NCBI RefSeq assembly: GCF_006345805.1
Contig: NC_043006.1
Span: 20,584,001 to 20,648,000 of the forward strand
Length of the DNA: 64,000 bases
Direction of reading: 5' to 3'
Source of the DNA: Octopus sinensis
Taxonomy: Eukaryota
This document shows positions 19,723 to 64,000 of this stretch, one piece after another. Below the pieces are notes generated by a model. It was not told the DNA's origin. It saw nothing but the letters and a program-made list of their open reading frames with translations, and did not search any database. Within the stretch, counting starts at the first letter, position 1. Every line of letters begins with the position of its first letter. The position numbers and the translations under genes were made by a program.

Positions 19723-20229
19723 ATGTGTAAACAGCAAAGCAACAATTAACCAGGAAAATTACCCATCAATATATAATTCCCAAATAAGGAGAGATATACC
19801 GAGAAGTGACCAAAGCAACCTTACCCAGTTTGGGCCCCTAACACTAAGGCATCTCAGGTAGGCTTCTCTCTCCATCCGGCCTACAGGCACATACTTAGGT
19901 TAGGCTCATTCACACGGGCCAACCTTGCTACATTCACCCACCTTTCGACAAACTTACCGGGTGACAGCGACTCCCTCTCTAGTCTCACTTTTCAGGTGGA
20001 ACCTGAAAAAGTCAATGAAGCCTTGGCCAAAGAGGAAGGTACCTATCTTCAACCCTTTCAATCGCATCCACCATACAACCTCTTTCGTCATAGTCACCAG
20101 AGAGAAAAACTGCCTTTCCTTCTCGGTCAAATTTGCGCGCCCCACGCAATTTCCAAACCTAACCCATCCGACCCATTTTAAAGAGGAAACGAAACAGTTA
20201 TTTAGTCAGAAAATATTCATAAAATTTAT

Positions 20230-22860
20230 TTATTCAGAAAGTAGGCATTGACTATTTTAAAGGAGTGCACTTCTAGCTTTCTTCGACGCAAAGTTGTCCA
20301 TGATACAATCGAAACTGGTGTTCTCCATTTCTCGCTCGATGGTAAGCAATGCGAGGTCACGGAGTCTTCCTTGTGTCATAGAAGCTCGCAGGAAGGACAT
20401 GATCAGGTTCAGCTTGCTGAAAGATCTCTCACAACCATCAATGGAAACAGCAACTGTCAACAGAATCTGTATCGCGACGCGAATGTTAGGGAACACACTT
20501 TCATCTCCATATTGGACGATAAATTGGAGAAGCTCCTCAGGATTTGATATTTGGAGGTGTTCGCGACCTGCAAGTAGCATTCTGCAATCGAGGATTTCTT
20601 CGAAAAGTTCGGTTGCATCGATATCGTTGCTGTAGACGTTTCCAAATGTATTGCATTACGCAGAAACTGGACATCGAAAACGAAGCCAAATTTGGTGTCA
20701 AGATCGTGTAGCCGGGAAAACCTCGCCCCAGTCATTGTTCTTCGCATGTTATTTTTTGCTGTCAGCTTAGCATTGATGGAAACATCGTGAATGACACGTT
20801 GAGATCTTCGACATGGCTTGACGTCAACTTGCCACCTTCTGCAAATGCTCAGTCCTTCTTCGAGTGAATCAGCCACTAAATCTTCTCTTGAAGCAATAAC
20901 ATAGTCGCAGAGACCTTTCAAGTCGAAAGATGCATCATGGAAATTCATTGTCGGATCCTGAAGCCTCTTTTGAACACGATCGATCCGTATGAGGACGCTA
21001 TTCCAGAAACCAAGCAATGCGAATAATTCATGATGGAGTATACGGTTAAACAGCAAGTTAGCGTCGTACCGTGTCTCAGTTGTCGCGCTTTCATCATCGA
21101 CGTTGTCTTGAAGAACTTGTAGAATTTCATCGAGGTAGTTTCTTACGTTTTTAACTGCATCCAACCGGGCATTCCATCTCGTTTCAGATTGCGACTTAAG
21201 AACCACAAGCATTATGGCCTTCAATTTTTCCCAGCGGTGTGTTGAACGAAAAAAGAATACTTAGAGTGTTTTGATTGCGCCAAAAAAAAAAACAAAAAAA
21301 ACAGACACCACCAACTCGTGTTTAGCTGCGGGTAGGCCGATTAAGTTTAACGAATGGTTGTCACAATTTACGAATAGGGCCAATTTGTTCTTTTCGTTGA
21401 TTCTCTACTGGACCCTGCTTCTGTACCCAGTCATCACAGCTGCATTATCATAGCACTAGGATCTACACTCTTCCAATGACATGTCGTCATCGGCCAACTA
21501 CTTCAAAATTACATCAACTAAACTCTCTGCATCCTTTTCGCCCGCCTGAATGAACCCGAGGAGGTTTCTTTCACCCGAACGCGCTTTCTTTTGAAGTCAA
21601 CTTCAACATACCTTACTACCAGCGGAATCTGATCACTATGACTCTATCAGGGGTTGTGTCGAACATGAGACCATAATACTTGGCTCTGCGAATGCTCTTT
21701 AGCAGATTATGACGAACGGCTGATGCCATGAGGTAAATAAATTCATTCTGAACATCGGGTGAAAAGTAAGATGTCGATCCAGGGTGACTCTCTACATAGC
21801 GAAGGTGTTCTTTCATGACGGGATCAAAGTGGCCAAAAGCTTGAGCAAACCAAGAAAATTACCAACATTTGAGTCTTCAGTCCACAGAAGGGATTCCCTA
21901 TGACCTCGCAAAGCCAAATTCTGAGTTGCAAGAAATTTCATGCAATGTAGAATTCTTGTCAAAACATCACGTCATCTTTGCTTTTCATGGTCGATTTGTG
22001 ACTTAAGAGCAGCGTCTATGAAACACTTGTTAGTAAGATTTCTTTCCATTTCTTTCCATTATGTGAAACTATCTCGATGATTCTTAGCGTTTTCATGAAC
22101 CAACATTCGTTCAGGCGCTTTCCACTGGTAAAATCCGCTTTCCTGCTCTAATGACGATTGATAATATGATCGGAAAAAAAGTAGACAACACAAACAGAGT
22201 GCAGACTTCTTATGAAGGGAATAGAGTAGCCATGAGTGAACAATCTCCTCACCTCGACCGTTTCTCAATTTTCTTTCGAACCAGTTTTTATTCATTGATC
22301 AGTTATTTGTTGGCAAGAAAGGTCTTTCCCAATTCTGAAAATATTTCCAGCCTAGATTAACTATTTCTATCCACCTATATTCAGGAACTATCGCCTTCCC
22401 GGTATTCGTGTCAAAATTAAGGAGCCCAATGTCATGCTGTTCGATCACATCTTCAAGTGCAGTGTTAGCGTTTTCGACCATATTGATTTCAGATTTGCTT
22501 TCACCGTTGTCAGACTTAAGACAATTGTCTTCTGCATCGGTTTGAGGTGGACTGTTACACGAAGCAGTATTGGACAATAAAATGCGCGGTTGAACTCCAG
22601 GCGACCTCTTGGTAGGTGTTGAAGAACTTTCGGCATGTTTTACAAAGCGGGACATGAAAACTTTGCTCAACTTCTTAGATCCTTCTGCCTCCAACTCGCG
22701 TCTTTTTCGCCCTTCTGCTCCAATTTCTTTCATAGTTAATGGTCTTTTCATGTTTTTATAACGATTTTCTAAAAGCAAGAAACCATTTCTTGAAAAAATC
22801 ATGAAAAATTCGAACATAGCACAGTGGTAGATTTGCCCGTTAAACAAGTCAAAATTATCG
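20230..22860 (-). pseudogene. hAT transposase remnant (TTF-type Zn finger, DUF4371-like region, hAT dimerisation domain), fragmented
   Basis: Collinear frameshifted pieces: WLLYSLHKKSALCLCCLLF; YFSPDVQNEFI...YYGLMFDTTPD; SETRWNARLDAVK; FPNIRVAIQILLTVAVSIDGCERSFSKL. TIRs not identified. Confidence 0.85.
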
Positions 22861-23032
22861 AGTTAATCTAAAAAAGTTTTGATTTTTTTTTGGTGGATAT
22901 TGGAGCAACGTGTATCAATGATTATAGTGATAGATGTACGGCAGGGTATGACTCATTAGCGGAGTTATATGAAGCTTCCAACGCGTTGGCTCAATGCGTT
23001 GCAGCACAAGAGCCAGTAATATGACCGAGCCA

Positions 23033-24042
23033 TTAATCCTTTGGGCAATAGATTCTGATGTGACCTGAATCGCCACAGAAGTAATATCGCGGCCTTCTTT
23101 CTTCCACAACCACCAGCAGATGCTGACCTCCAGGGATTTCTATTAGGTCAATAATTTTCTCTACAGTTTCTGGTTTTACTTGCAGTAGAATTTCCAACCC
23201 TGTCCCAACCCAGTTCTCATTTTTGGATTTTTGGATTTCTAGGAAGCTTTTAGGATCTTCTAGCACCATGGCTTTCACTACCCAGCAGAAATCGATTTCT
23301 GGTGGCAGGTTACTTATTTTTATTCGGATCACTCTCCGTCTCAGATAGATGGGAATTAAAGTGAACTCCTCTGTTTTTAATGGGACTGTTGAGTGTTTTT
23401 GTGCTAGTGATTCCGACTGGAATATGACCTTGATGTAGGTGAACTTTGGGGCGTGACAGACAAAGCTGACATCTTCCCAAATATTTTTCAGGCAGAGCTC
23501 AGCTTGGCCTGGTGGTACTTTTTCCAGTCTTTTTTTCATAGACTGACATCTGTACATGTTTGTCTTTTTCTTTTCGGATGCAGGTTCTGAAGGATATTTG
23601 GTGTGGCATTTCTTTCTTCACGTCTTATAATCCGCTCAGTTTACTTTAAATGTTCATCCGGATCCTTTAACGACATAATTTCAAACTTATTTGTAACTTT
23701 TGCGAAGGAAACGTTATTTCTATTTGACCATTCTCTTTCTTTGTTCGAAATTATACTGATTTGTGTGGTGATCGTAGTGGTGATATTTTTCTTCTACAAT
23801 TGGTTGCTGTTAGTTATATTTCGTGCTTCCCTGATCGAATTCTTATTACTCCTGATACTTCCACTGTGGATGTTCTTGTTGCTCTCATTGCTGTTGCTAT
23901 TCACCCTGCTACTACTATTATCATTTATATCTAGAGTGAGTATGGGCGAGTGACGGCGAAAGACAATTTCGCGTTCTACATCTCCACCCATCTTCCCTCT
24001 CTTGTTGATTCACAGGCAAAGACGACGACGACGACGACGCCA
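23033..24042 (-). pseudogene. Tx1/L1-type ORF1 remnant, distant relative of the ORFs at 33935-35145 and 40348-41521
   Basis: FTLIPIYLRRRVIRIKISNLPPEI aligns with ILFLPSYKGEKLTRLWVCGLPPDI. Degenerate knuckle RPRYYFCGDSGHIRIYC. The N-terminal part is frameshifted. Confidence 0.65.
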
Positions 24043-24313
24043 TATTAAATTTTGCAAATTTTGAAAGGAAAATTAATTTTCTTTTCGAGTTAATTTTTTG
24101 ACCCGCAGGGCAAAAAAAGAAAAAAAGAAAAAAAGAAGAAAATATTACACTCTTAATCAGACCAATATAGTCTAAATTAACTTAGTCACAAGTTATCACA
24201 ATAAAATGTAACAATCATAATCTTTTTAGAGGTAAACAAAGCACATACTTACGGAGCTCTGGCGACAACAACAACAACCTCAACAATAATAATAATAATA
24301 ATAATAATAGTAA

Positions 24314-33194: not shown

Positions 33195-33627
33195 CGTTAA
33201 CGTTAACTTTTATTGAAAAAAGGCATATCTACAGTTTAATAATCTACGGATTTTGTTGCCTCATAACTTCCAGAAAAATGGATACTTTTTAATGAAATTT
33301 TCATCACCTAATTGCTTATATCCTGTAAATTGAGTGTATGTAAAGATTTGTTGGAAAATTTTTCCGAGGTGTTGGTGAGAGGAGTTTCGGAAAATTCACA
33401 GGACCCGACATTTCCCCCCTCATAACTTTCTAGAAAATAGGTAGTTTTTAATGAAATTTTATACAAATGCCTTTCAAACGGTGTAGATTACGATTACAAA
33501 GAAATCTGTAGGCAAAATGTTTGGAAGGGGACGGGGGTAGAGTTTCTAGAAAACGGAGTTTCGGATCAGAAAGATGCCACGCAGTTTGACTGAACCCGGA
33601 ATCATGTGGTTGGTTAGCAAGCTACTT

Positions 33628-36059
33628 TATTTCAATAATTTGCCACTAGGGCAGCACACAGAGTAGCTACGGGCTGGACAAAGACATTAATGGATGATGG
33701 TGGTGGTGGATGAAGATGGTGATGGGAGAAGTCAGAAAGCGCCCGCCGACTTTTGCTTCTCTAAAACAATGTTCAATAATTACATTTAATACAATGATTA
33801 CAAATTACAAATTTTAGAGGAGGCAATAAACCTCCTCTTCAAAATGTTACAAAATGTTCACATGATATCAAAATACATATTTTTGAGGAGGCAACGAACC
33901 TCCTCTTCCACATGTTACAAGGATGTTACACCGCCTAAGTGACCCGGCCGACCATTTCTCTTGCCTCATTGAGGCAATACTCGCTGGTCAGGCCGGTGTC
34001 CAGTGGTATAGTCTGGAAGGAGTCTGCCGGGCAGGAAGCCACGATCCTGTGTAGATCAGCCCTTCCCACGACCCCCGCAGCTAACTGCGAAGGCCACTCG
34101 GGGTTTTCCACACAGGACCGGATTACCTCCCAATGTCCTCTCTTTCTCACTTTTTTCACGGTGCTTTCCACCTTTTTTCCTTTGAAAAAGAGGAGCACAA
34201 AATCTTCCACGAATAGTCCCTCAGGCGGCACACCCGCCTTAGAGGACCCGGGATACTCGGGAACCGCCGTCTGCGTGTAGCAATCCGCCGGCGAAGCTCC
34301 GTTTCTCTTTTTCTTTTTCATTTTCTTCTGGCCCTGGGCCACGGGAGGCTGAGGTTCCGGAGCTGTGCGCACCGGGTTCTCCTCTTCCGCAGCTTTCGGG
34401 TCCTTTGGGGGTCGCCATTGCTCCCCGCCTTTCTCTTTCTTTTGGAGGAGGATTTTTCCCCCTCCTCACTTTGCTTCTCTCTCTCCATTGAAGAGGCAGG
34501 GAGAGGCTCCAATATCAGCCGCTCCAGGATCCTACTCTGGACCCTGGGGCAGCTCTTCTTGATGTGGCCGGTCTCCAAACACAGGTGACACTTGGGGGGG
34601 CGTCCCTCAAGCATCACCGGATACTTGGACCCGGCCATTCTCAAAAAGTCTGGCAAAACCAGACTCTTGGCTGACTGGGTCCATAGGGTTAAGGTTGCCT
34701 TAGACCCCTCCCAATCAGCCGCAGGCTGTACATTGACATTTAGGATTTTTGCGTCCCTGTCACCCAGACCCCGGCGGATAGAGTGTTCCATCCACTCGGG
34801 TTCAATGTCGGGTGGCAGGCCGCAGACCCACAGTCTTGTCAATTTTTCTCCCTTGTAACTGGGGAGAAACAAGATTTCTTTGCCCTCAATGGGCCTGCTT
34901 GCAAACTCGCAAGCATCTTTAGGGGAGCCAAACAGCAACCAAATCGTTGCGTATTTGGCTCCCCGTTGGATATATTTTACGGCTGGCATGTGGTTTGCCA
35001 GCTCTTCAATAATTTTCGCCTTCGGAAAAACCATGATAGCGTTGAGCGACCTTGAATAAGTCCTCAGTACCACGGTCTTATCCTCGAGCTGTTTGACATA
35101 TTTTTTGGGAGCTTCTAGCTCCCAAACAATCAGTTCCTTTGCCATTTTAAACAAAAAATGTAAATAAAGTTCGAATAGGAAAAACACAAAAGTAATAGAA
35201 AGAGGGAAGAAAAAACAAAATGGAAACGAGAGTTACAATAAAAACAGTTCGGAGTTCAAATGAAGGATAGCTAGAGGAAGAAGTTCAAATGTGGCAAAGA
35301 ATTATTTTTTTTTGGCCGAAAGGTAGTCCAGGCCAAACGTCACGGCAATCCTTGGTAATTCTGGTGCTTGTAAAAACAGTCCACGAATATCCTTGGTGCC
35401 TCCTGGTAATCCAAAGGTGCAATATTCTACGTGTGGTAATCCAAAGCGAAATTGGTGCTCCAATGAATCGAATTATTTTTGATGTGGGCTACGCCTCTTC
35501 AAAAAACACACTTCTCACTAAAACGTGAGATTTTAAATACAACAGGCAGAAAAAATATGTCCGAAGCAAGGCGAAGTCTATTATCCGCAAAAGATTATTA
35601 ACGCTAATTAACGTTGACGTCAAAAAGTATTAATGGCAGGCAATAAACCTCGTCAAGCCTCTAAAAATATTCAAAACAGTCCTACCTGCTGTGCCAAACA
35701 GTTCAATATTCCACGTGTGGTAGTCCAAGTGTGAAAATTGGTACTCCAATGAGTCAAAAATATTTCTGAGGAGGGGCTACGCCTTCCTCAAAATAACACA
35801 ATTTCTCACTAAAAGGTGAGACTTTTAAATACGCCAACAGGTAGAAAAATATTCGAAGTAAAGTGAAGTATATTACCCGCAAAAATTATTAACACTAAAT
35901 AACGTTGTTAATGCTAAAAAGTATTAACGACAGGCAATAAACCTCACTAGGCTTCCATCAATATTCGAACGTTCCACCCGTTGACGTAAAATGTTCAATA
36001 ATTCACGTTAAAACGTGACATTTGCCGGAGCGAAGAAAAAACGCGTCCGTTCGGTGAGA
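33628..36059 (-). mobile_element. ORF1-only (half-LINE-like) Tx1/L1-type retroelement, copy 1
   Basis: Bounded by TSD aagctactt (33619-33627) / aaggtactt (36060-36068). The 5' UTR has two ~290-bp monomers. Single ORF with a CCHC knuckle. The 3' end reads ...gaaata into the TSD, forming AATAAA. Confidence 0.85.
33935..35145 (-). CDS. ORF1-like nucleic-acid-binding protein (~403 aa if one base is added to the G5 run at 34407-34411): RRM-like region, CX2CX4HX4C knuckle, basic linker, unknown C-terminal domain
   Basis: MAKELIVWE...CHLCLETGHIKKSC...; continues in the next frame to ...ENPEWPSQLA...EAREMVGRVT*. Homologous over its whole length to 40348-41521. Confidence 0.75.
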
Positions 36060-37433
36060 AAGGTACTTACCACACAGCCACTCCTGCGCCTATCTATTGA
36101 TATTTTTCAATCTTTTTCTCCCTATAAACAAATTTTATGAAATGATGTCAAAGTAACACACGTGTAGTCACAACCGAGCGAGGCCGTGTTATGTGTGTGT
36201 GTAAGAAAAAACTACCTAAAAGCATCTTGAATGTTCATATTAATCTGTCAAATGTAATTCTTATTCGTTATTTGCTTGTAACTTTGCAAATTTTTGACTT
36301 ACAGATTTAAAATTTTGTCACGGGTGCTTTATATACCACTGGGTTATAGTTGACTTTTATGGGCAGGTAAATTTAATTAACAGGTGTAAAAGCATGGATA
36401 AACGCTAAAATTGAAATTCTTAATGCATCTTGCCTGTTTGATTTGTTACTAAAATTATCCTAGATGGCAACCGACAAAAAATTTGCCACTTTTGAAGATG
36501 AGGTACACTAATTTGAATTAATTAAAATATGGGTATAATCGATACAAGATTTTTATCTTTCGGTAAATATTTCGTAGCTCGGTGTGGAATAATTTTTTTC
36601 CAGTTTTTTTTCGAATGCATTCAACATATCTGACCTCCAAACCCGCCACAAGTCACTTATTTCCGGAAAAGAAAGGTGGGAGGAGTGGTGAGGACAACGA
36701 AGTTTCCCACCAAAGGGGTTTTGTTTCGCGGGTCATTTTTTTTCTTTTTCAGGTTAGTTTGCACGCTTTCAATGAATGTGACACCGAAATCATGCGTAAA
36801 CGGCTCCTTTTTCCAGAAAAGGAACGATTTGGTTGCTATTTCTAGCATGACCGGCTACTACGTAACAACTATTTGCCTTCACACCGAAATATTTACCAAC
36901 TTTTTTCCTTCCTTTATTTTTTCCACTTTATTTTTTCGCGGGTCAATATTTTCTCTGTTGACATCCACCTCAGTTAATTTTTCTTTCCTCCCAGTTCTGT
37001 GCTTTCTGAAAGAAAAGTCCTCACATTATCTCAAAGCCACGAGAATTCACTAACGCGATTTGTTTACTTTTTAAAAAAAGATTTCGTAGAGGAATTAGAT
37101 ACAACGGTTTTTGGCCAGTTTAAACACTAAAGTGTTGCAAAGTGCCAAAACTATAAATTCAGCTTCTTTGCCTTTTTGAGGGCTTTAGAACCCCAAAACC
37201 ATAGTTTTTTTCGCTTTAGAGTTAAAAGATGCTAATTTTATAGTTTTAAATTCTAAAGGGCCTAAAAAGGGCTGAAAGAATGACGTGTACAGTAATAAAT
37301 TTGCTAAGACAATCTGAAAACAATAGAAACTTTTAAACGTTTAACGGTTTTTATGAAATTTTGGGGTTAACGGATTTGAATTTACGGAAGCTAAATTTAA
37401 CGGAAGTTAATTAGTCCGATGATGATTTTCAAA

Positions 37434-37476
<43 letters not shown>

Positions 37477-37529
37477 GTTTAAATATTTGTTGTGCAAGAT
37501 TTTTTATGTGAAGTCGTGTGTTGAAACAG

Positions 37530-37956
37530 ATATTGTTATATTTCGGAATGGTCATATTGCCAGTTTAGCCAATAAAAACACACGCACTATATATTTGGTG
37601 TTATTTTGCTTCAGTGTAATTTATTTTTTACATTAATCTTAATCTTATTTCGGCCAGATTTCTTTCGTCACACTCCTGTGACCGCATCAGTGGTCCTTTG
37701 TTTTCTTCTTTCTTATTTGTGTCTCTCCTTACTAACCGTCAGCCATTTTGCATTTCTATTGTATGTCTTCATTTGCGCATGCTTATATCTCTATGTGCGT
37801 CTATGTTTATTTAGTGTGTGTATGTGGGGGGATGCCTGTAATAAGATTAAGATTAATGTAAAAAATAAATAACACTGAAGCAAAATAACACCAAATATAT
37901 AGTGCGTGTGTTTTTATTGGCTAAACTGGCAATATGACCATTCCGAAATATAACAA

Positions 37957-37959
<3 letters not shown>
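37530..37959. mobile_element. Penelope-like insert in (TA)n with a 118-bp inverted repeat
   Basis: Arms 37530-37647 and 37842-37959 differ by 1 mismatch. The spacer holds a minus-strand hammerhead-like sequence ccactgatgcggtcacaggagtgtgacgaaagaaatctgg. Confidence 0.6.
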
Positions 37960-37994
<35 letters not shown>

Positions 37995-38020
37995 CATACA
38001 TACATACATACATACATTTA

Positions 38021-38174
38021 GGGAAAGTTTACGAAAAAAAAACAAAAGACGAAGACAGGTGGTGTACAAAACAAACAGATGTATTAGTATAACGCTCAGG
38101 AATAGAAAATGTCTTTTGCGTTTCGAGCCTACGCTCTTCTACTGAAAGGGACACAGAAAAAACAAGGAGAGAAA

Positions 38175-38175
<1 letters not shown>
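38021..38175 (-). mobile_element. Penelope-like terminal repeat, same family as 1795-1968
   Basis: Reverse-complement homology; flanked by (TA)n/(CATA)n. Confidence 0.55.
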
Positions 38176-38212
<37 letters not shown>

Positions 38213-38213
38213 G

Positions 38214-38249
<36 letters not shown>

Positions 38250-38339
38250 TGTGTGTGTGCGTATGGGGTGTGTGTGCCCAAGCATGACCGGATCTTTAAA
38301 ACTGAAACAATTCAAAGAATTTAAGGAATATGTGTTCGT

Positions 38340-38449
38340 GTTTTTTTTTACATATATATATATTCCCTTCTTTCCTGAGCGTCAAATAATACTTTATTTG
38401 TTCCACGTCCTCGCGTTGCTATGTTTTTTTTGTGTTTTCTTGTTTGGAT

Positions 38450-38460
<11 letters not shown>
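38340..38460 (+). mobile_element. 3' fragment of the hammerhead-bearing repeat seen at 56098-56310
   Basis: ttcctgagcgtcaaataatac...ttggattaac followed by (TA)n. Confidence 0.7.
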
Positions 38461-38502
<42 letters not shown>

Positions 38503-38884
38503 TATATATATAGGGAGAGAGAGAGAGAGAGCTAGATTACTTCAATATATGAATTATGCTACATTGGTGATGGTAATGGAGGTGGTGGTGGTGTTAGTGG
38601 TGGGAATTAGTGATGGTTGGCATTACGGCTAATTGCGATCCAGTAATGTGCGCCCAAGACACACGCGCTCCCACACACAGACGCCTACACAAACACATAC
38701 AGCACGCACGAAAACATACAAACGCATAGACATATACAAAGACATAACACACTCACATATACACATATCAACACGCAAACACACACACACATTGTCCTCT
38801 CTGCCTTCTCGTCTATTTAGTCATTATATCACTAGACCAATTAGTAACTATTTATATAGCCATAACCAAACATTTCCGCTTTAG

Positions 38885-39138
38885 TGTCTATTCCCCCCCT
38901 CTTTCCCCCCACCCGTTCCTCTCCCAGTCCCCTTCTCTCTGTCTCTTTTCTCTCTTCTTTCTTTCTTTCTCTTCCTTTTTTCAGTCTCTTTCTATCTCAT
39001 GTGTCTCTGTCTTTCTCTTCCTTACTGATGTTTTCTCTCTTTCTCCATCTGTCTTCCCCTTCGCTCTCTCTTTCTCCATCTGTCTCCCCCTTCGCTCCCT
39101 CTTTCTCTCTCCATTACCCCTCTGTCTCTGTCTGTTTC

Positions 39139-39195
<57 letters not shown>

Positions 39196-39340
39196 TTCTT
39201 GCTGGTATTTCCTTCCACTTCGTCTGTCTCTTCTTTCTTCCTCCCTTCCCCCCATTCCTTTCATTTCTCCGTCTCTTTCTGTCTCTCTGTCTCTGTCTCT
39301 GTCTCCCTCTCCTCTCTCTCTCTCTCTCTCTCTCTTCCCG
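38885..39340. repeat. CT-rich low-complexity tract
   Basis: Degenerate (CT)n/(CTGT)n. Confidence 0.9.
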
Positions 39341-39840
39341 CCAGTATTTTCTTGAGATAATCAAATGTTGAATGTAATTTAACAGTAGAATTAAAGTTAA
39401 TTACTAATCAATTAAAATCGCAATTAACTAAATTGCACTTCAAAAATAACAATAGACAGAATTATTCCGGATGAAGTTTTTATTATGACCGAAATTTGAC
39501 ATGATAACTGAGCTGGAGTCGAGAATTCTTTGGGTGGCGTCATATGTCCGCCATGGCGTTTTCTGTCTTATTTCACTGTGACTCCTCTTCTTGAATATCA
39601 ACGCTGGGAACCATCTTGGGACAACTCTTACTCTTTTACTTGTTTCAGTCATTTGACTGCGGCCATGCCGGAGCACCGCCTTTAATCGAGCAACTCGACC
39701 CCGGGACTTATTCTTTTGTAAGCCCAGTACTTATTCTATCGGTCTCTTTTGCCGAACCGCTAAGTAACGGGGACATAAACACACTAGCATCGGTTGTCAA
39801 GCAATGCTAGGGGACGAACAAAGACACACAAACACACACA

Positions 39841-39883
<43 letters not shown>

Positions 39884-40347
39884 GACGGGCTTCTTTCAGT
39901 TTCCGTCTACCAAATCCACTCACAAGGCTTTGGTCGGCCCGAGGCTATAGTAGAAGACACTTGCCCAAGGTGCCACGCAGTGAGACTGAACCCGGAACCA
40001 TGCGGTTGGTAGACAAGCTACTTTATTTCAAAACATTTGCCATAAAGGCAGTACACAGATTAAGTTAGCTTTGCGGGCTGGACGAGGACATTAATGAAGT
40101 GAATGATAATGAAAGACAGATGATAAGGATGGGAGAAGACAAAAAGCGCCCGCCGACTTTCGCTTCTCTAAAACATTGTTCTTTTTAAAGATAAACACAA
40201 AACGAGGTATTAAACCTCTTACAATTTTTCCAATTTTTGGACTTAGCAGTCCATTATTAATAAAAATGCAAAACGAGGTATTAAACCTCTTTCAATTTTC
40301 CAATTTTTGGACTTAGCAGTCCATTATTAATACTAACAGTTCAATAA

Positions 40348-41521
40348 TTACATATCGTCCTCGAAATAGCTTGTGCCCGCGCCCTCCACCATCAACCACG
40401 CCTCCCTCAGAACGTAATCAAGTTCCGAGTTCGCGTCGCCCGGGACCAAGCTATAATCTTCATTGAGCTCCTTTAGCCCAAGCGTCACGTCGAACGCCAC
40501 GGCCTCCACAGCTATCTGCGGAGGCCATTCGGGGTCCTGTGTGAAGGCTAAAGGAGCTCCCTTGTGGTACTCTTCCATCATTTTTTTTTCAATTTCTCCT
40601 CCTCTATAGAAGAGGACCAATACGTTCAGTTCTTTCGTTGGCGGCACAGTTCCCGCCAACGTCTGCGGCTCATGGATATCAGCCGCCCGACCTTTCTTTC
40701 TTTTTCTCCTCCTTCTTTTGGGGGAGACTGCTGACCCAGGGGACTCCGTCACCAGACACGGGGGATCGCTATCCCCCTCCGCCACCTGAGCGTTCTTTGG
40801 CGAGCAGCCATTGTTGCTCGCCTGTCTCTTTCTTTTCGTGGAGGCAACCTCCTCCACGACTTCCACCGTCTCCCCCTCCAATGAGGGGGCGGCGGGCGCC
40901 TTTTCCCCTTCATGCTCCGGGGCACCACCACGGCCCCCGGGACAATTCCTCTTGATATGTCCGGGCTTCAGGCACAGGTGACACTTGGGGGGGGGCGTCC
41001 CTCGAGTATCACCGGGTACCTGTGCCCAGCCATTCTCAGGAAGTCCGGGAATTTTATTTCTCCCACGGCCACCGGTGTCCACAGGGTCAAAGTTGCCTTT
41101 GACCCCTCCCAGGCGACCGCGGGAGCCATTTTCACACTCAGTAGCCTGGGTCCGCTATCCCCCAGGCCTCGCCGGATGGTCTTCTCGATCCATTCCGCCT
41201 CCGTGCCCGGGGGCAGCCCACAAACCCAGACTCTTTTTACTTTTCCTCTCCCTCCAGTGGCTCGCTAGCAAATCTGCTAGCTTCCTCGGGGGTACCAAAC
41301 AGCAACCACACCGTTGCAAATTTACTCCCCCGAGAAATAAACTTTATCGTTGGTAGGTGGTCCCCCAACTCTTTCTCTATGGTGCTCCTGTCGAAGAGGG
41401 CGATAGCTCCACGCGACCTAGAATAGATTCGTAGGACCACCGTCCTCTTCTCAAGACTTTCAATCCACTGCTTGGGTGGGACAACCTCCCATTCCAAAAC
41501 AGTGGTTTCTTTTGTTGCCAT
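40348..41521 (-). pseudogene. ORF1-like protein, disrupted by a ~30-nt deletion near 41250 and a G9-run frameshift at 40987-40995
   Basis: MATKETTVLEWE...FASEPLEG / KVKRVWVCGLP...FLRMAGHRYPVILEGRP / PKCHLCLKPGHIKRNC...QDPEWPPQIA...*. Confidence 0.82.
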
Positions 41522-41693
41522 GATTTTGAAAAGAAGTTCAACTAAAAGTTCAAAGTCCAATAAGAAAAAAACACAATGACAGAACAGAAAGACAGAACAG
41601 AGAAAGGGACGAAGGAAGACAGTTCAAATAATGGCAACACAGTTCTGCAACTGGTAATCCTCACGAAACAGGGTACTCCTAGTTGCAGCACAC

Positions 41694-41805
41694 TTGGTTC
41701 TCCGTGGTAAATCCAAGCACAATTGGTTCTCCGTGGTAAATCCAAGCACACTTGGTTCTCCGTGGTAAATCCAAGCACAATTGGTTCTCCGTGGTAAATC
41801 CAAGC
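41694..41805. repeat. 29-bp tandem repeat x4 in the 5' UTR of element 2
   Basis: Unit ttggttctccgtggtaaatccaagcac(aa/ac) starts at 41694, 41723, 41752 and 41781. Confidence 0.95.
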
Positions 41806-42231
41806 GAACAAATTAATTTTTGAGGAGGGGTTATGCCTCTTCAAAATACACAATTCTCACTAAAAGGTGAGACAATAAATACGCCAACAGGCAGAACAAA
41901 TACATCCGAAGCAAAGTGAAGCTTATTACGCGCAGAAAAGTGTTAACACTAATTAACATTAATGCCAAAAAAGTATTAACGGCAAGCAATAAACCTCACT
42001 ATGCTTCCAAAATATCCAAAATGTCCTACCTGTTGCCGTAAAATGTTCAATAATTCACGTTAACACGTGACATTTGCCGGAGCAAAAAACAGCACGTCTG
42101 TCTGGTAAGAAGCTACTTACCACACAGCCACTCCTGCTTACCACACAGTCACTATGAATTGTGGAGAGACTGCTCACCGCTTTTATCAGCAGTAGCACTG
42201 TGAAAGTGACGAGTGTTTTTTATATTATAGA

Positions 42232-61760: not shown

Positions 61761-62186
61761 TGTCTTCCCTCTCTATCTGTCTGCATTTTATCTCAATTGA
61801 AAAAACATTCTAAAACAGCGGTCCTTATAGCCACATAGCCATTCAATGCTTAAAAACTAGTTTTATAGATATTTTTTTCAAAATTCGTATTTTATTTATT
61901 ATACATTAACTTGAGCAGAAGGAAATCTAGCTATTTAATGCATCTAAAGCAACATTTTTTTCATGGACCCTTAATGTACTTCTATGAGTCCAAAGTTTAC
62001 TATTTTGCTACCATGGACCCCTCCCTACCAAATCTTATATGGATCCTGGTTGAGAATCCCTGTCCTAAAACATTAATTATGGACATATTTACACATGTGA
62101 GCACCTCATCAAAGTTGGCTCTTCATAACTTGCAGAAAAACGAGTATTTTTTAACGAAATTATCCACAAATACTCGTCAGATGGTT

Positions 62187-62542
62187 TGATCTAATTCTCG
62201 CCCACAACATCATAAGCGGAAAGTGTAACCTCTCGAAAGAGCTGTTCTTCACTCCTGCTCCAGAGCGTCGGTTGCGGGGTCATTCCGAAAAGCACTACCT
62301 GCGACGATTTCATCTCAATCGAAGGAGAGGAGCTTTCTCCGTCCGGGTTGCGGATCCGTGGAACAAGCTGCCAGACGAGATGGTGAAGATGCCGACGACC
62401 GCTTTGTTCAAAGCCTCCCTGGACCTCAAGTGGCCTGAACTCTTTACATGAACACCACCCTGTACTTAACTCCATGTCCCCCTACATGGCCTTGCTATTT
62501 GCTTTTAAGCCAAATTAGCTAACTAACTAACTAACTAACTAA
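62187..62542 (+). mobile_element. CR1-clade LINE 3' end
   Basis: DLILAHNIISGKCNL...RLRGHSEK...FSVRVADPWNKLP...LDLKWPELFT*, then a 3' UTR and a (TAAC)n tail. Confidence 0.85.
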
Positions 62543-62548
62543 CATATT

Positions 62549-63020
62549 GGAATTTGTTGCGACATATTTTTTATGACATAGGTGAAGTGTTTCAGATAAC
62601 TCACACGATTCGAATTTGTTTCGTCATAACTTACAAAACGAAAACAAAATGGCTAATTTTTAATGAAATTTTCTACAAATAGCTTTCATATTGTATAAGT
62701 TCTGTTTATATTGGAAATTGTTGCGAAAACTTTTTCGGAAGAGGGGAAAAGTTTCAGATAAATAAAACGATTCGTCTTAGTTTCTTCCTAACTTTCAAAA
62801 AGTAATAAAAAGGAGACTAGTTCTTACTGAAATTTTCTATTCCAATATAATCAGAATCTATAGATTCTGATCAAAATTGGAATTTGTTGCGAATTTTTTT
62901 TCTGTGGTAGGAGAGGGGTTTCGGGTAAAACACACGATTCGACTTTGTTCTTTATAACCTTCAGAAATTTTCTACAAATATCTTTCTGATAGTGTAGATT
63001 ACGATTAAATCGGAATTTAA
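62549..63020. repeat. Diverged ~130-170-bp tandem repeat x3
   Basis: ggaa(t/a)ttgttgcga recurs near 62549, 62712 and 62879. Related sequence at ~33280-33540. Confidence 0.65.
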
Positions 63021-63162
63021 TATGAAAAAAAAAGAAAAGAAAAGAAAAAAATGCTGTTTGCGCACACTTGCATACTAACAGACATCGCATGTATATCTAA
63101 AATATGAAAACTTGAAATTTTGAAAAAAAAAAATGGGATTTGTGTCAGTATGCTGGTGTGTA

Positions 63163-63528
63163 TACTCTTTTACTCTTTTACTTGTTTCAGTCATTTGACT
63201 GCGGCCAAGACTTATTCTTTTGTAAGCCCAGTACTTATTCTATCGGTTTCTTTTGCCGAACCGCTAGTTAACAGGGGACATAACACACACCAGCATCGGT
63301 TGTCAAGCAATGCTAGGGGGACAAACACAGACACACAAACACACACACGCATATATATATACATACATATATACGACGGGCTTCTTTCAGTTTCCGTCTA
63401 CCAAATCCACTCACAAGGCCCGAGGTTATAGTAGAAGACACTTGCCCAAGGTGCCACGCAGTGGGACTGAACCCCGAACCATGTGGTTGGTAAACAAGCT
63501 ACTTACCACACAGCCACTCCTGCGCCTA
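63163..63528 (-). mobile_element. SINE family C (internal deletions)
   Basis: Collinear with the other copies. Confidence 0.9.
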
Positions 63529-64000
63529 TGTATGGCTAACAAGTTTTTAAAAATTACCTTAAATTCATATATAACCGTAGTTAGCAACCTCTGTTATGTA
63601 TTTGTAGGGATACCCATTAAAAGATGCCTATTTTACTGAAAGTTATGAGGAAGCAAAGTCGAATCGTTTGAATTGTCCGAAGATCCTCTCTCCCCCAACC
63701 GGAAAAATTTCACAACAAACTCGTAATCTATATCATCTGAAATGGTATTTATCTTATACTTATTTATCCTTTTATTTGTTTCTGTCATTAGACTTCGGCC
63801 ATACTAAAGAATTTCAGTTGAACGAATCGACTCACAGAAATTCCTTTTTTAAAACCTGATACTCTATCGGCCTGTTTTGTCGAGCCGCTAGGTTACGGGG
63901 ACGTAAACATGTCAACACCGGTAGCCAAGCAATGGTAGAAGACAAACAAACACACACACATATTGGAATCTTACATATATAAGATCCGAAAAAATGGATC

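What the first reader, a model, noticed from the sequence alone, without database searches (positions are those of the whole stretch)
33571..42137. Two diverged ORF1-only retroelements inserted at the same base of a SINE head: candidate SINE-targeting half-LINE system
Seen: elements 33628-36059 and 40024-42109 each interrupt SINE-C at gtgtggt^AAGTAGCTT (sense), just after the A-box and in the same orientation as the SINE. The 9-bp TSD is perfect in copy 2 and has 1 mismatch in copy 1. Both have homologous 5' termini (...gctccggcaaatgtcacg...) and end ...gaaata directly against the TSD, forming AATAAA. The implied bottom-strand nick is TT/A. The N-terminal ~80 aa of the two proteins are only about half identical by manual alignment, while the host SINEs differ at about 8 of 57 comparable bases. 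At least seven other SINE-C copies here carry the same site empty. Established: TT/A nicking and an A-rich 3' end fit L1/Tx1 target-primed reverse transcription. Tx1-clade elements are often target-specific (Tx1L in Xenopus Tx1D transposons, Keno in U2, Mutsu in 5S, Dewa in tRNA arrays), and ORF1-only 'HAL1' elements are known. Inference: two independent site-specific insertions by an old non-autonomous lineage that uses an abundant SINE as its landing pad, separating the SINE's A and B boxes and borrowing RT/endonuclease in trans. I do not recall this combination being described, but I cannot search to confirm that.
Basis: partly seen in the sequence, partly recalled or inferred. Interest (0 to 1): 0.9.

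Follow-up and report, generated by a model that had tools for sequence, protein, structure and literature searches.

The report
SINE-targeting ORF1-only octopus retrotransposon
Two old, diverged copies of a small octopus retrotransposon that encodes only an RNA-binding ORF1 protein sit at exactly the same base of two different SINE copies, so it is most likely a non-autonomous, sequence-specific relative of L1/Tx1 LINEs that uses an abundant SINE as its landing site; this is a new variant of known kinds, not a new kind.

Summary
E1 (33628-36059) and E2 (40024-42109), both on the minus strand, interrupt a tRNA-like SINE at GTGTGGT^AAGTAGCTT in SINE orientation. Each has a 9-bp duplication (8/9 and 9/9), and at least 7 SINE copies in the window keep the site empty.

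The two insertions are independent:
- The host SINEs carry diagnostic bases of two different SINE subfamilies.
- Flanks outside the SINEs are unrelated.
- The ORFs differ with dN/dS 0.14-0.25 and near-saturated synonymous sites.

A third, paralogous copy in Octopus sinensis (59% aa identity) has the same SINE-head 5' junction.

Each element is 5'UTR, one ORF of about 400 aa (two RRM folds, a CCHC knuckle, a basic linker and a family-specific C-terminal domain), then a short 3'UTR. There is no endonuclease or RT. The ORF2-less layout predates the E1/E2 split.

The ORF is homologous to ORF1 of autonomous octopus L1-like LINEs (APE+RT+zf-RVT). One of these is bounded by (ATT)n. The elements also share those LINEs' 3' hairpin and A-rich tail.

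Best reading: a HAL1-like, Tx1-like target-specific "half-LINE" mobilised in trans. Not shown: genome-wide specificity, the partner, and absence from Repbase/Dfam.

The parts
36069..36093 (-). 5' part of the host SINE of E1 (ATAGGCGCAGGAGTGGCTGTGTGGT), up to the insertion point
36060..36068 (-). upstream copy of the 9-bp duplication of E1 (AAGTACCTT, 1 mismatch)
33628..36059 (-). Element E1, 2432 bp. 5'UTR 36059-35146, with a ~291-bp unit duplicated in tandem at 35420-35966. ORF from ATG 35145 to stop 33935, with one frameshift near 34410. 3'UTR 33934-33628, with a 68-bp repeat x1.9 at 33794-33920.
33641..33653 (-). 3'-terminal hairpin of E1 (UGCC-CUAGU-GGCA), followed by the A/U-rich tail AAUUAUUGAAAUA (33628-33640)
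33619..33627 (-). downstream copy of the 9-bp duplication of E1 (AAGTAGCTT)
33571..33627 (-). 3' part of the host SINE of E1 (subfamily with GCTAACC...GGCAT). It is cut off at SINE position ~95 by another repeat.
42119..42137 (-). 5' part of the host SINE of E2 (GCAGGAGTGGCTGTGTGGT). It is preceded at 42137-42156 by an extra partial head, CATAGTGACTGTGTGGTAAG.
42110..42118 (-). upstream copy of the 9-bp duplication of E2 (AAGTAGCTT)
40024..42109 (-). Element E2, 2086 bp. 5'UTR 42109-41522, with a 29-bp repeat x4 at 41687-41805. ORF from ATG 41521 to stop 40348, with a ~10-codon deletion plus frameshift near 41243 and a +1 shift in a G-run near 40974-40992. 3'UTR 40347-40024, with a 70-bp repeat x1.9 at 40198-40332.
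40038..40050 (-). 3'-terminal hairpin of E2 (UGCC-UUUAU-GGCA), followed by the tail AAUGUUUUGAAAUA (40024-40037)
40015..40023 (-). downstream copy of the 9-bp duplication of E2 (AAGTAGCTT)
39625..40023 (-). 3' part of the host SINE of E2, complete to the SINE tail (subfamily with GT(T/C)TACC...GGCAC...ACTATAGCCTCGG)

Best explanation
E1 and E2 are dead copies of a non-autonomous non-LTR retrotransposon family of octopuses.

What an element carries:
- A 5'UTR that presumably holds its own promoter.
- One gene for a 'Jockey-like' ORF1 protein: two RRM domains, one CCHC zinc knuckle, a basic linker and a family-specific C-terminal domain.
- A short 3'UTR ending in a small hairpin and an A/U-rich tail.
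- No endonuclease and no reverse transcriptase.

How it most likely moves (inferred): its RNA, coated by its own ORF1 protein, is copied into DNA by target-primed reverse transcription. The ORF2 protein comes from a related autonomous L1/Tx1-like LINE that recognises the shared 3' hairpin and tail. That partner's apurinic-type endonuclease nicks one defined site in the head of an abundant SINE. The bottom strand is cut at CTACTT^ACCAC and the top strand 9 nt downstream, which gives the AAGTAGCTT duplication.

Because AAUAAA is formed across the 3' junction, transcripts probably end a few tens of nt inside the SINE. That read-through could base-pair with the nicked target and fix the exact 3' junction (inferred).

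Shown here: same-site, same-orientation, independent insertions; the ORF1-only layout; long-term purifying selection on the ORF; homology to ORF1 and to the 3' end of autonomous L1-like LINEs.
Inferred: mobilisation in trans; the endonuclease as the source of specificity; the role of the read-through.
For: 1. Same site and orientation in two SINE copies of this window, plus the same 5' junction in a paralogous O. sinensis copy. The 9-bp duplications are 8/9 and 9/9..

2. The events are independent.
- The E1 host SINE has GCTAACC/GGCAT. The E2 host SINE has GTCTACC/GGCAC/ACTATAGCCTCGG. Each matches a different set of neighbouring SINE copies.
- Sequences outside the SINEs are unrelated.
- Identity to the SINE is about 98% up to AAGTAGCTT and collapses right after it.

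3. Divergence happened in living lineages.
- NG86 dN/dS is 0.25 (E1-E2), 0.24 (E1-L001) and 0.14 (E2-L001), with all bootstrap upper bounds below 0.37.
- pS is 0.58-0.71.
- The terminal 300 and 150 bp differ by only 17-23%.

4. ORF1-only layout.
- Pfam finds only a weak zf-CCHC.
- tblastn with an intact octopus ORF2 finds nothing in E1 or E2.
- After removing lineage-specific repeat arrays, both 3'UTRs are collinear from the stop codon on, about 170-190 nt.

5. The protein is an ORF1p.
- The AlphaFold model has mean pLDDT 70.6 and shows two beta-alpha-beta domains.
- Best Foldseek PDB matches are tandem-RRM proteins: UP1, NONO/SFPQ and IMP3 RRM12.
- A CCHC knuckle follows. This is the 'Jockey-like' ORF1p class (PMC3905857).

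6. Relatives.
- The profile search gives 50 hits, several in O. vulgaris, O. sinensis and O. bimaculoides.
- In L002 and L005 the homologous ORF1 is followed by an ORF2 with Exo_endo_phos, RVT_1 and zf-RVT. Its best PDB match is human L1 ORF2p at 2e-71.
- Direct tblastn of those ORF1s against E1 gives E = 4e-15 and 2e-17.

7. A shared 3' motif, CTCTGTGT..GCC-CTTGT-GGC.AATAA, with a 4-bp hairpin in which 3 pairs show compensatory changes.

8. Target specificity occurs in this octopus LINE group.
- L002 is bounded by (ATT)n on both sides.
- The relative in the window at about 19.9-24.3 kb has (ATT)n at its 5' end.
- L005 sits in head-to-tail arrays.
- This matches the published habit of the Tx1 clade (PMC4494074, PMC4640811).
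Against: - Only three copies could be examined, and the third lacks its 3' end. Genome-wide specificity is therefore untested.
- No ORF2-bearing element with these termini or this target was found. Mobilisation in trans and the source of the specificity are inferred.
- Two copies only 6 kb apart are unexpected unless the family is abundant or inserts regionally.
- UTRs being far better conserved than synonymous sites is unusual for LINEs. It could instead reflect recombinant (mosaic) lineages.
- Clade assignment (Tx1 versus L1 proper) was not tested by RT phylogeny.
- The 9-bp 'TSD' cannot be told apart from element-borne homology to the target without 5'-truncated copies.
Confidence: 0.75

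Rival explanations
1. A single SINE-ORF-SINE composite arose once. It was then amplified as a unit by the SINE's own LINE partner, or copied by segmental or tandem duplication, so the 'same site' reflects one event.
For: The two copies lie 6 kb apart in the same orientation. All three copies share the SINE-head 5' junction.
Against: - The host SINE parts carry diagnostic bases of two different subfamilies, starting 2-4 nt beyond the duplicated 9-mer.
- The SINE parts are about 94-98% like their subfamily, while the inserts differ by 17-32% and synonymous sites are saturated.
- Outer flanks are unrelated.
- The O. sinensis locus is paralogous.
Confidence: 0.05
2. The insert spreads among SINE copies by ectopic homologous recombination or gene conversion through its SINE flanks. 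No site-specific nuclease or reverse transcription is needed.
For: The insert is embedded in an abundant repeat that offers homology on both sides.
Against: - Conversion tracts would have to end within a few nt of the insert on the 3' side, because the subfamily-diagnostic bases begin at SINE positions 49-51.
- The 9-bp direct duplication is not expected from conversion.
- The 3' hairpin and A-rich tail shared with autonomous LINEs and the ORF under purifying selection point to retrotransposition.
Confidence: 0.05
3. An ordinary, non-specific L1-like element with a loose TT/A nick preference happened to land at the same place.
For: The implied nick, CTACTT^A, resembles the L1 endonuclease preference (sequence).
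Against: Three of three copies sit at the same SINE position and in the same orientation. The chance estimate is about 6e-9. Other SINE positions offer TT/A sites that are not used.
Confidence: 0.03
4. These are pseudogenes or retrocopies of a host gene domesticated from a LINE ORF1. The purifying selection acted on the host gene, and the copies were inserted by some LINE that happens to favour this SINE site.
For: - dN/dS is well below 1.
- One copy is annotated as a protein-coding locus in O. sinensis.
- ORF1-derived host genes exist; L1TD1 is one (PMC4161310, listed).
Against: - The conserved 5' and 3' termini, including a LINE-type 3' hairpin and tail, travel with every copy.
- There is no poly(A) tail or intron-loss signature.
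- All three copies are disabled by frameshifts.
- The annotated O. sinensis 'gene' is itself a truncated element behind a SINE head.
Confidence: 0.07
5. This is a variant of the main model. The duplicated 9-mer is not a true target-site duplication. The element RNA itself starts with SINE-like sequence, and the 5' junction is made by annealing of the cDNA end to the homologous target, as in R1/R2-type elements.
For: - Right after the 9-mer, E2 reads CTTACCA, which equals SINE positions 49-55.
- L001 continues 4 nt further into the SINE (GCTT).
- E2 has an extra partial SINE head upstream.

Against: A shuffle test shows that the SINE-likeness of the first 20-54 nt is not significant for E1 (p = 0.44) or L001 (p = 0.15), and only marginal for E2 (p = 0.02).
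Confidence: 0.15

Closest known systems
Tx1-clade target-specific non-LTR retrotransposons: Tx1L in the Tx1D piggyBac element, Tx1-Mar in Mariner-N4_AMi, Keno in U2, Kibi/Koshi in microsatellites, Dewa in tRNA arrays (PMC4494074, PMC4640811)
   Same: - Insertion at one defined position of a multicopy sequence, here another transposable element, in a fixed orientation with a short duplication.
- Relatives in the same genome encode an APE-type endonuclease, an RT and a C-terminal zinc-binding domain.
- At least one such relative is bounded by a microsatellite on both sides.
- ORF1 is of the RRM+CCHC type.
   Different: - The elements here have no ORF2 at all.
- The target is the head of a SINE, which I did not find among reported Tx1 targets in the searchable literature.
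- Clade membership by RT phylogeny could not be tested.
HAL1 ('half-L1'), the ORF1-only non-autonomous derivatives of mammalian L1 (PMC5753468, citing Smit 1999 and Bao & Jurka 2010)
   Same: - Encodes only ORF1p.
- Presumably depends on the ORF2p of a related LINE.
- The ORF1-only state is stable over long times.
   Different: - HAL1 ORF1p is the L1 type (coiled coil, RRM, CTD). Here it is two RRMs plus a CCHC knuckle plus a novel C-terminal domain.
- HAL1 is not site-specific.
- Different host phylum.
SINEU / Tx1-Mar of crocodilians (PMC4494074)
   Same: A non-autonomous element inherits the target preference of a Tx1-type partner and inserts into another transposon family.
   Different: SINEU is short and non-coding with snRNA-derived heads. 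Here the non-autonomous element keeps a selected protein gene, and the SINE is the target, not the passenger.
R1/R2-type rDNA elements, with read-through or co-transcription with the target (as discussed in PMC4494074)
   Same: Precise junctions at one site. Possible use of downstream target sequence in the transcript, since AATAAA straddles the 3' junction.
   Different: Different clades and targets. The use of read-through is only inferred here.

Membership tests
Tx1 clade (L1 group) of non-LTR retrotransposons | RT domain groups with Tx1 in an RT phylogeny (RTclass1) | not testable with these tools
   E1 and E2 have no RT. The related autonomous octopus LINEs match human L1 ORF2p best (2e-71), but no Tx1 reference set is available. 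The O. vulgaris annotation lists 'L1-Tx1' as its L1-like class (PMC13282606).
Tx1 clade (L1 group) of non-LTR retrotransposons | APE-type endonuclease N-terminal to the RT | tested here: not met
   Absent from E1 and E2. Present in the relatives L002 and L005 (PF03372).
Tx1 clade (L1 group) of non-LTR retrotransposons | Sequence-specific insertion into a repeated target | tested here: met
   Three of three copies at the same SINE-head position and orientation. The sample is small.
Jockey-like (RRM + CCHC) ORF1p class | [quoted passage not shown] | tested here: met
   The model shows two RRM-like domains, and the best folds are tandem-RRM proteins. The sequence CHLCLETGHIKKSC gives a weak zf-CCHC hit. 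It aligns with the knuckle of relatives that pass the Pfam cut-off.
HAL1-type 'half-LINE' | Complete termini but only ORF1, no ORF2 | tested here: met
   The short 3'UTR is collinear in both lineages.
HAL1-type 'half-LINE' | Derived from mammalian L1 (coiled-coil/RRM/CTD ORF1p) | tested here: not met
   The ORF1p architecture is RRM-RRM-CCHC, and the host is a cephalopod. It is an analogue of HAL1, not a member.
HAL1-type 'half-LINE' | Amplified to many copies by a partner LINE | tested here: inconclusive
   Three copies were seen. The octopus genomes cannot be searched at the DNA level with these tools.
Stringent-type LINE/non-autonomous pair sharing a 3' end | 3' terminal stem-loop and tail shared with an autonomous LINE | tested here: met
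   The motif and a 4-bp hairpin, with compensatory changes in 3 pairs, are shared with L002, L004 and L005. However, no partner with a closely matching 3' 150 nt was found.
Composite SINE-based element (SVA-like) or segmental duplicate | All copies share the same host-SINE variant and outer structure | tested here: not met
   Different SINE subfamilies and unrelated outer flanks.
Dada / other DNA transposons that target small-RNA genes | Terminal inverted repeats and a transposase | tested here: not met
   No TIRs at the ends. The only ORF is an RRM-CCHC protein.

The most novel reading that the evidence does not exclude
Octopus genomes may harbour a guild of long-lived, protein-coding 'half-LINEs'. 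Members seen here are the SINE-head family and at least one further ORF1-only family next to (TA)n. They would keep ORF1 under selection for tens of millions of years or longer while parasitising the ORF2 of target-specific Tx1-like LINEs.

In the SINE-head family, the family-specific C-terminal domain of ORF1p would take part in choosing the partner or the target. Specificity would then not reside only in the endonuclease.
Probability: 0.15. Interest if true: 0.75.

Novelty: new variant of a known kind. Interest (0 to 1): 0.5.

Why it matters
If the specificity holds genome-wide, this combines two known strategies in one element: target-specific integration into a harmless multicopy sequence, and loss of ORF2 with retention of ORF1.

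- It would add SINEs to the list of safe-harbour targets of APE-type LINEs.
- It would give a natural system for asking why a non-autonomous element keeps ORF1 under purifying selection, that is, what ORF1p does in cis.
- Every insertion separates the two promoter-like boxes of a SINE copy, so the family also inactivates copies of the most abundant octopus repeat class.
- A short, well-defined target with many empty and filled sites would make the partner endonuclease easy to assay.

Tried and rejected
Searches for more copies all failed.
- Three word-indexed protein searches returned only the O. sinensis copy P0001 for this family.
- The exhaustive representative search found only distant ORF1 relatives.
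- The window's own ORF is not on record.
- An 18-mer scan of metagenome contigs gave 86 chance hits with no homology.
- A scan of prokaryotic genome contigs found nothing.

Annotation attempts.
- Pfam on the ORF pieces gave only a sub-threshold zf-CCHC, and nothing for the C-terminal domain.
- The C-terminal domain has no homologue among the 58 proteins fetched. I did not model it because only 2-3 sequences exist.
- ARAGORN and Rfam do not recognise the SINE head as a tRNA.
- No RT or APE gene lies in the window's larger ORFs.

Ideas rejected or weakened.
- I considered that the element's 5' end is an old SINE-derived stretch. The shuffle test does not support it: p = 0.44, 0.02 and 0.15 for E1, E2 and L001.
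- I considered an ancient tandem duplication. It is rejected by the SINE subfamily markers, the unrelated flanks, and the contrast between SINE divergence and synonymous divergence.

Full report
**1. What is in the sequence.**

The window is octopus-type DNA rich in a ~450-bp SINE. A full copy used as a probe finds about ten copies. The head 25-mer GTGGCTGTGTGGTAAGTAGCTTGCT occurs 8 times with at most 2 mismatches, against 0 expected in shuffles.

Two of these heads are interrupted. Read on the minus strand:
- E1 (36059->33628) lies between ...GTGTGGT AAGTACCTT and AAGTAGCTT GCTAACC...
- E2 (42109->40024) lies between ...GTGTGGT AAGTAGCTT and AAGTAGCTT GTCTACC....

Joining the flanks restores an ordinary SINE head. 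Both elements point the same way as their SINE. Both end in ...TTGAAATA, so AATAAA is formed across the junction. The geometry puts the priming nick on the bottom strand at CTACTT^ACCAC.

Seven closely related SINE copies and two older relatives in the window keep the site uninterrupted.

**2. Anatomy of the elements.**

E1 and E2 are homologous along their length. The first ~300 bp are 83% identical, the coding part ~68%, and the last ~150 bp 77.5%. No other copy is in the window.

E1 has a ~291-bp unit of the 5'UTR duplicated in tandem. E2 has a 29-bp repeat x4 in the 5'UTR. Each has its own 68- or 70-bp repeat with a GAGG...CCTC hairpin in the 3'UTR.

Each element carries one reading frame of about 400 codons. 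In E1 it is broken by one frameshift. In E2 it is broken by a ~10-codon deletion with a frameshift and by an extra G in a G-run.

Once the lineage-specific repeat arrays are removed, the two 3'UTRs are collinear from the stop codon to the end, about 170-190 nt. So there was never room for an ORF2 in the common ancestor of the two lineages. Pfam finds no endonuclease or RT. tblastn with an intact octopus ORF2 finds nothing in E1 or E2.

**3. The protein.**

Pfam gives only a sub-threshold zinc knuckle.

An AlphaFold model built on an alignment with distant relatives has mean pLDDT 70.6, and 75-90 over residues 10-210. It shows two beta-alpha-beta domains. Foldseek against the PDB returns tandem-RRM proteins first: UP1/hnRNP A1, NONO/SFPQ and IMP3 RRM12, at E about 1e-4.

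The knuckle CHLCLETGHIKKSC follows directly. Two RRMs plus a CCHC knuckle is the 'Jockey-like' class of LINE ORF1 proteins (PMC3905857). After a basic linker comes a ~100-aa C-terminal domain. It is recognisably conserved between E1 and E2 (28% identity, E = 5e-8) but has no other homologue among the proteins fetched.

**4. Are the two insertions independent?**

Four tests say yes.

(a) The host SINEs carry the diagnostic bases of two different subfamilies that are both represented by other copies in the window. E1's host has GCTAACC...GGCAT. E2's host has GT(T/C)TACC...GGCAC...ACTATAGCCTCGG. These markers start only 2-4 nt beyond the duplicated 9-mer.

(b) DNA outside the SINEs is unrelated between the two loci.

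(c) Identity to the SINE consensus is about 98% up to AAGTAGCTT and collapses immediately after it in all copies. The SINE parts are therefore young, and the inserts are old relative to each other.

(d) Nei-Gojobori estimates give dN/dS = 0.25 (E1-E2), 0.24 (E1-O. sinensis copy) and 0.14 (E2-O. sinensis copy). Synonymous differences are 58-71% of synonymous sites, so dS is above 1. Most of the divergence therefore accumulated while the gene was under purifying selection, in replicating lineages. It did not accumulate in place after a duplication.

**5. A third copy.**

The only close protein homologue in 5.8 billion clusters is an 'uncharacterized protein' of Octopus sinensis, 59% identical. 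Its locus L001 has flanks unrelated to the window. Its ORF is broken by a frameshift in an A-run, and its 3' end is truncated.

About 515 bp upstream of the ATG it has the junction ...GGCTGTGTGGTAAGTAGCTTGCTT|CCTGTGC.... This is the same SINE head joined to the element's 5'UTR at the same place, give or take 4 nt.

With about 10 SINE copies per 64 kb, the chance that two further random insertions hit the bond and orientation defined by the first is of the order of 6e-9.

**6. What it is related to.**

An exhaustive profile search found 50 weaker relatives. Several are annotated proteins of O. vulgaris, O. sinensis and O. bimaculoides. They align over both RRMs and the knuckle. I looked at four of their loci.

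- **L002 (O. sinensis).** The ORF1 is followed by ORF2 pieces with Exo_endo_phos and zf-RVT. The whole element is bounded on both sides by (ATT)n.
- **L005 (O. vulgaris).** At least three full-length copies lie head to tail. They have an intact 516-aa ORF1 and a 1132-aa ORF2 with Exo_endo_phos, RVT_1 and zf-RVT. The best PDB match of that ORF2 is human L1 ORF2p at 2e-71 over APE+RT.
- **Direct comparison.** tblastn of these two ORF1s against the window hits E1 at E = 4e-15 and 2e-17.
- **L003 and L004 (O. vulgaris).** These are a second ORF1-only family. They show the same pattern of a poorly conserved ORF (65%) and a better conserved 3' end (80%).

The last 30-40 nt of E1, E2, L002, L004 and L005 share the motif CTCTGTGT..GCC-CTTGT-GGC followed by an A-rich tail. 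RNAalifold predicts a 4-bp terminal hairpin in which 3 pairs show compensatory changes.

The elements thus belong to an octopus group of L1-like LINEs. The published O. vulgaris repeat annotation lists 'L1-Tx1' among the recently active LINE classes, and SINEs as 11.6% of the genome (PMC13282606). Sequence-specific insertion into microsatellites, small-RNA genes and other transposons is the hallmark of the Tx1 clade (PMC4494074, PMC4640811).

**7. How it most likely works.**

Shown: site, orientation, duplication, independence, ORF1-only layout, selection on ORF1, and a 3' end shared with autonomous LINEs.

Inferred:
- The RNA is made from a promoter in the conserved, sometimes duplicated 5' unit. 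T-runs near the 5' end argue against Pol III read-through from the SINE head.
- The RNA is bound by its own ORF1p and is reverse-transcribed at the target by the ORF2p of a related autonomous LINE that recognises the 3' hairpin and tail.
- That partner's APE nicks CTACTT^ACCAC in the SINE head. A second nick 9 nt downstream on the other strand yields the AAGTAGCTT duplication.
- The AATAAA straddling the junction would place the RNA 3' end inside the downstream SINE, which could help to register priming.

Each insertion separates the two promoter-like boxes of the SINE by more than 2 kb. I note that ARAGORN and Rfam do not call these heads as tRNA. 'A box/B box' therefore rests on resemblance to the textbook consensus only.

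**8. Open points.**

- Only three copies were reachable, because the octopus genomes cannot be searched at the DNA level here.
- No partner with these termini or target was found.
- The UTR ends are much better conserved than synonymous sites. That fits strong cis-constraints, but could also mean that the lineages are mosaics.
- Right after the 9-mer, E2 reads CTTACCA (as the SINE does) and L001 reads GCTT. A shuffle test shows this SINE-likeness is not significant overall: p = 0.44, 0.02 and 0.15. I therefore keep the simple 9-bp TSD model and list homology-assisted 5' joining only as a minor variant.
- Two copies 6 kb apart suggest that the family is abundant or regionally biased. This is untested.

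**9. Comparison and novelty.**

It works like a Tx1-type target-specific LINE, and like HAL1, the ORF1-only derivative of mammalian L1 (PMC5753468). It fails one defining feature of each, so it cannot be filed as a member:
- It has no APE or RT of its own, so Tx1 membership cannot be shown.
- Its ORF1p is not of the L1 type, so it is not HAL1.

In the searchable literature I found Tx1 targets that include DNA transposons, LTR elements, microsatellites, snRNA, 5S and tRNA genes. I found no SINE-head target and no site-specific ORF1-only element. Repbase and Dfam could not be consulted.

I rate it a new variant of a known kind, of moderate interest.

Noticed in passing
window 19896-24312 (minus strand): A third ORF1-bearing LINE relative. 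Its ORF1 (23033-23557) is 37% identical to the ORF1 of the (ATT)n-flanked LINE in L002. Only the C-terminal end of ORF2 survives (19896-20152, 65% identical), and no APE or RT is detectable. (ATT)n lies directly at its 5' end (~24285-24312). It looks like another internally deleted, microsatellite-targeting element.
   Followed up: partly
L002 7770-13350 (O. sinensis CM016872.1): An autonomous L1-like LINE (ORF1, then APE...zf-RVT) bounded on both sides by (ATT)n microsatellite. This fits a microsatellite-specific Tx1-like element.
   Followed up: partly
L005 2440-17026 (O. vulgaris OX597840.1): At least three full-length LINE copies in a head-to-tail array, period ~5.27 kb, with intact ORF1 (516 aa) and ORF2 (1132 aa; APE+RVT_1+zf-RVT). 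It may be a currently active family. The reason for the tandem arrangement is not known.
   Followed up: partly
L003 7330-9706 and L004 7625-9660 (O. vulgaris): A second ORF1-only family (P0006/P0041), with no ORF2 and a 0.5-0.9 kb 3'UTR. (TA)n lies immediately upstream of a palindromic 5' region. L004 ends in the same 3' hairpin and A-rich tail. The ORFs are 65% identical and the 3' ends 80%.
   Followed up: partly
window 42137-42156: An extra partial SINE head (CATAGTGACTGTGTGGTAAG on the minus strand) sits directly upstream of the host SINE head of E2, which itself starts at GCAGGAG. It could be a 5'-junction artefact of integration or a small duplication. Unexplained.
   Followed up: no
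window 36000-36010, 33765-33780, 33628-33645; 42050-42060, 40335-40350, 40024-40040: The motif (G)TRAATTATTGAAC / GCAAATTATTGAAATA recurs in both elements: ~55 nt from the 5' end, just after the ORF stop, and at the 3' terminus. It may be a protein-binding or priming motif.
   Followed up: no
window 35420-35966 and 41687-41805: Tandem repeats in the 5'UTRs: a 291-bp unit x1.8 in E1 and a 29-bp unit x4 in E2. They are reminiscent of the monomer promoters of mouse L1.
   Followed up: no
window 33250-33570: The host SINE of E1 is cut off at SINE position ~95 by another repeat, which recurs at about 62100-63700.
   Followed up: partly
P0057 (O. sinensis LOC115225349 isoform X3), residues ~520-654: A predicted host protein isoform ends in about 130 aa of LINE ORF1 of the L002/P0012 type. 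This may be exonisation of a LINE ORF1 or an annotation artefact.
   Followed up: no
window 33622-33633 and 40018-40029: A canonical AATAAA signal is created only by the junction of the element's end (GAAATA) with the target (AAGTAG...). Transcripts would be expected to end inside the downstream SINE.
   Followed up: no
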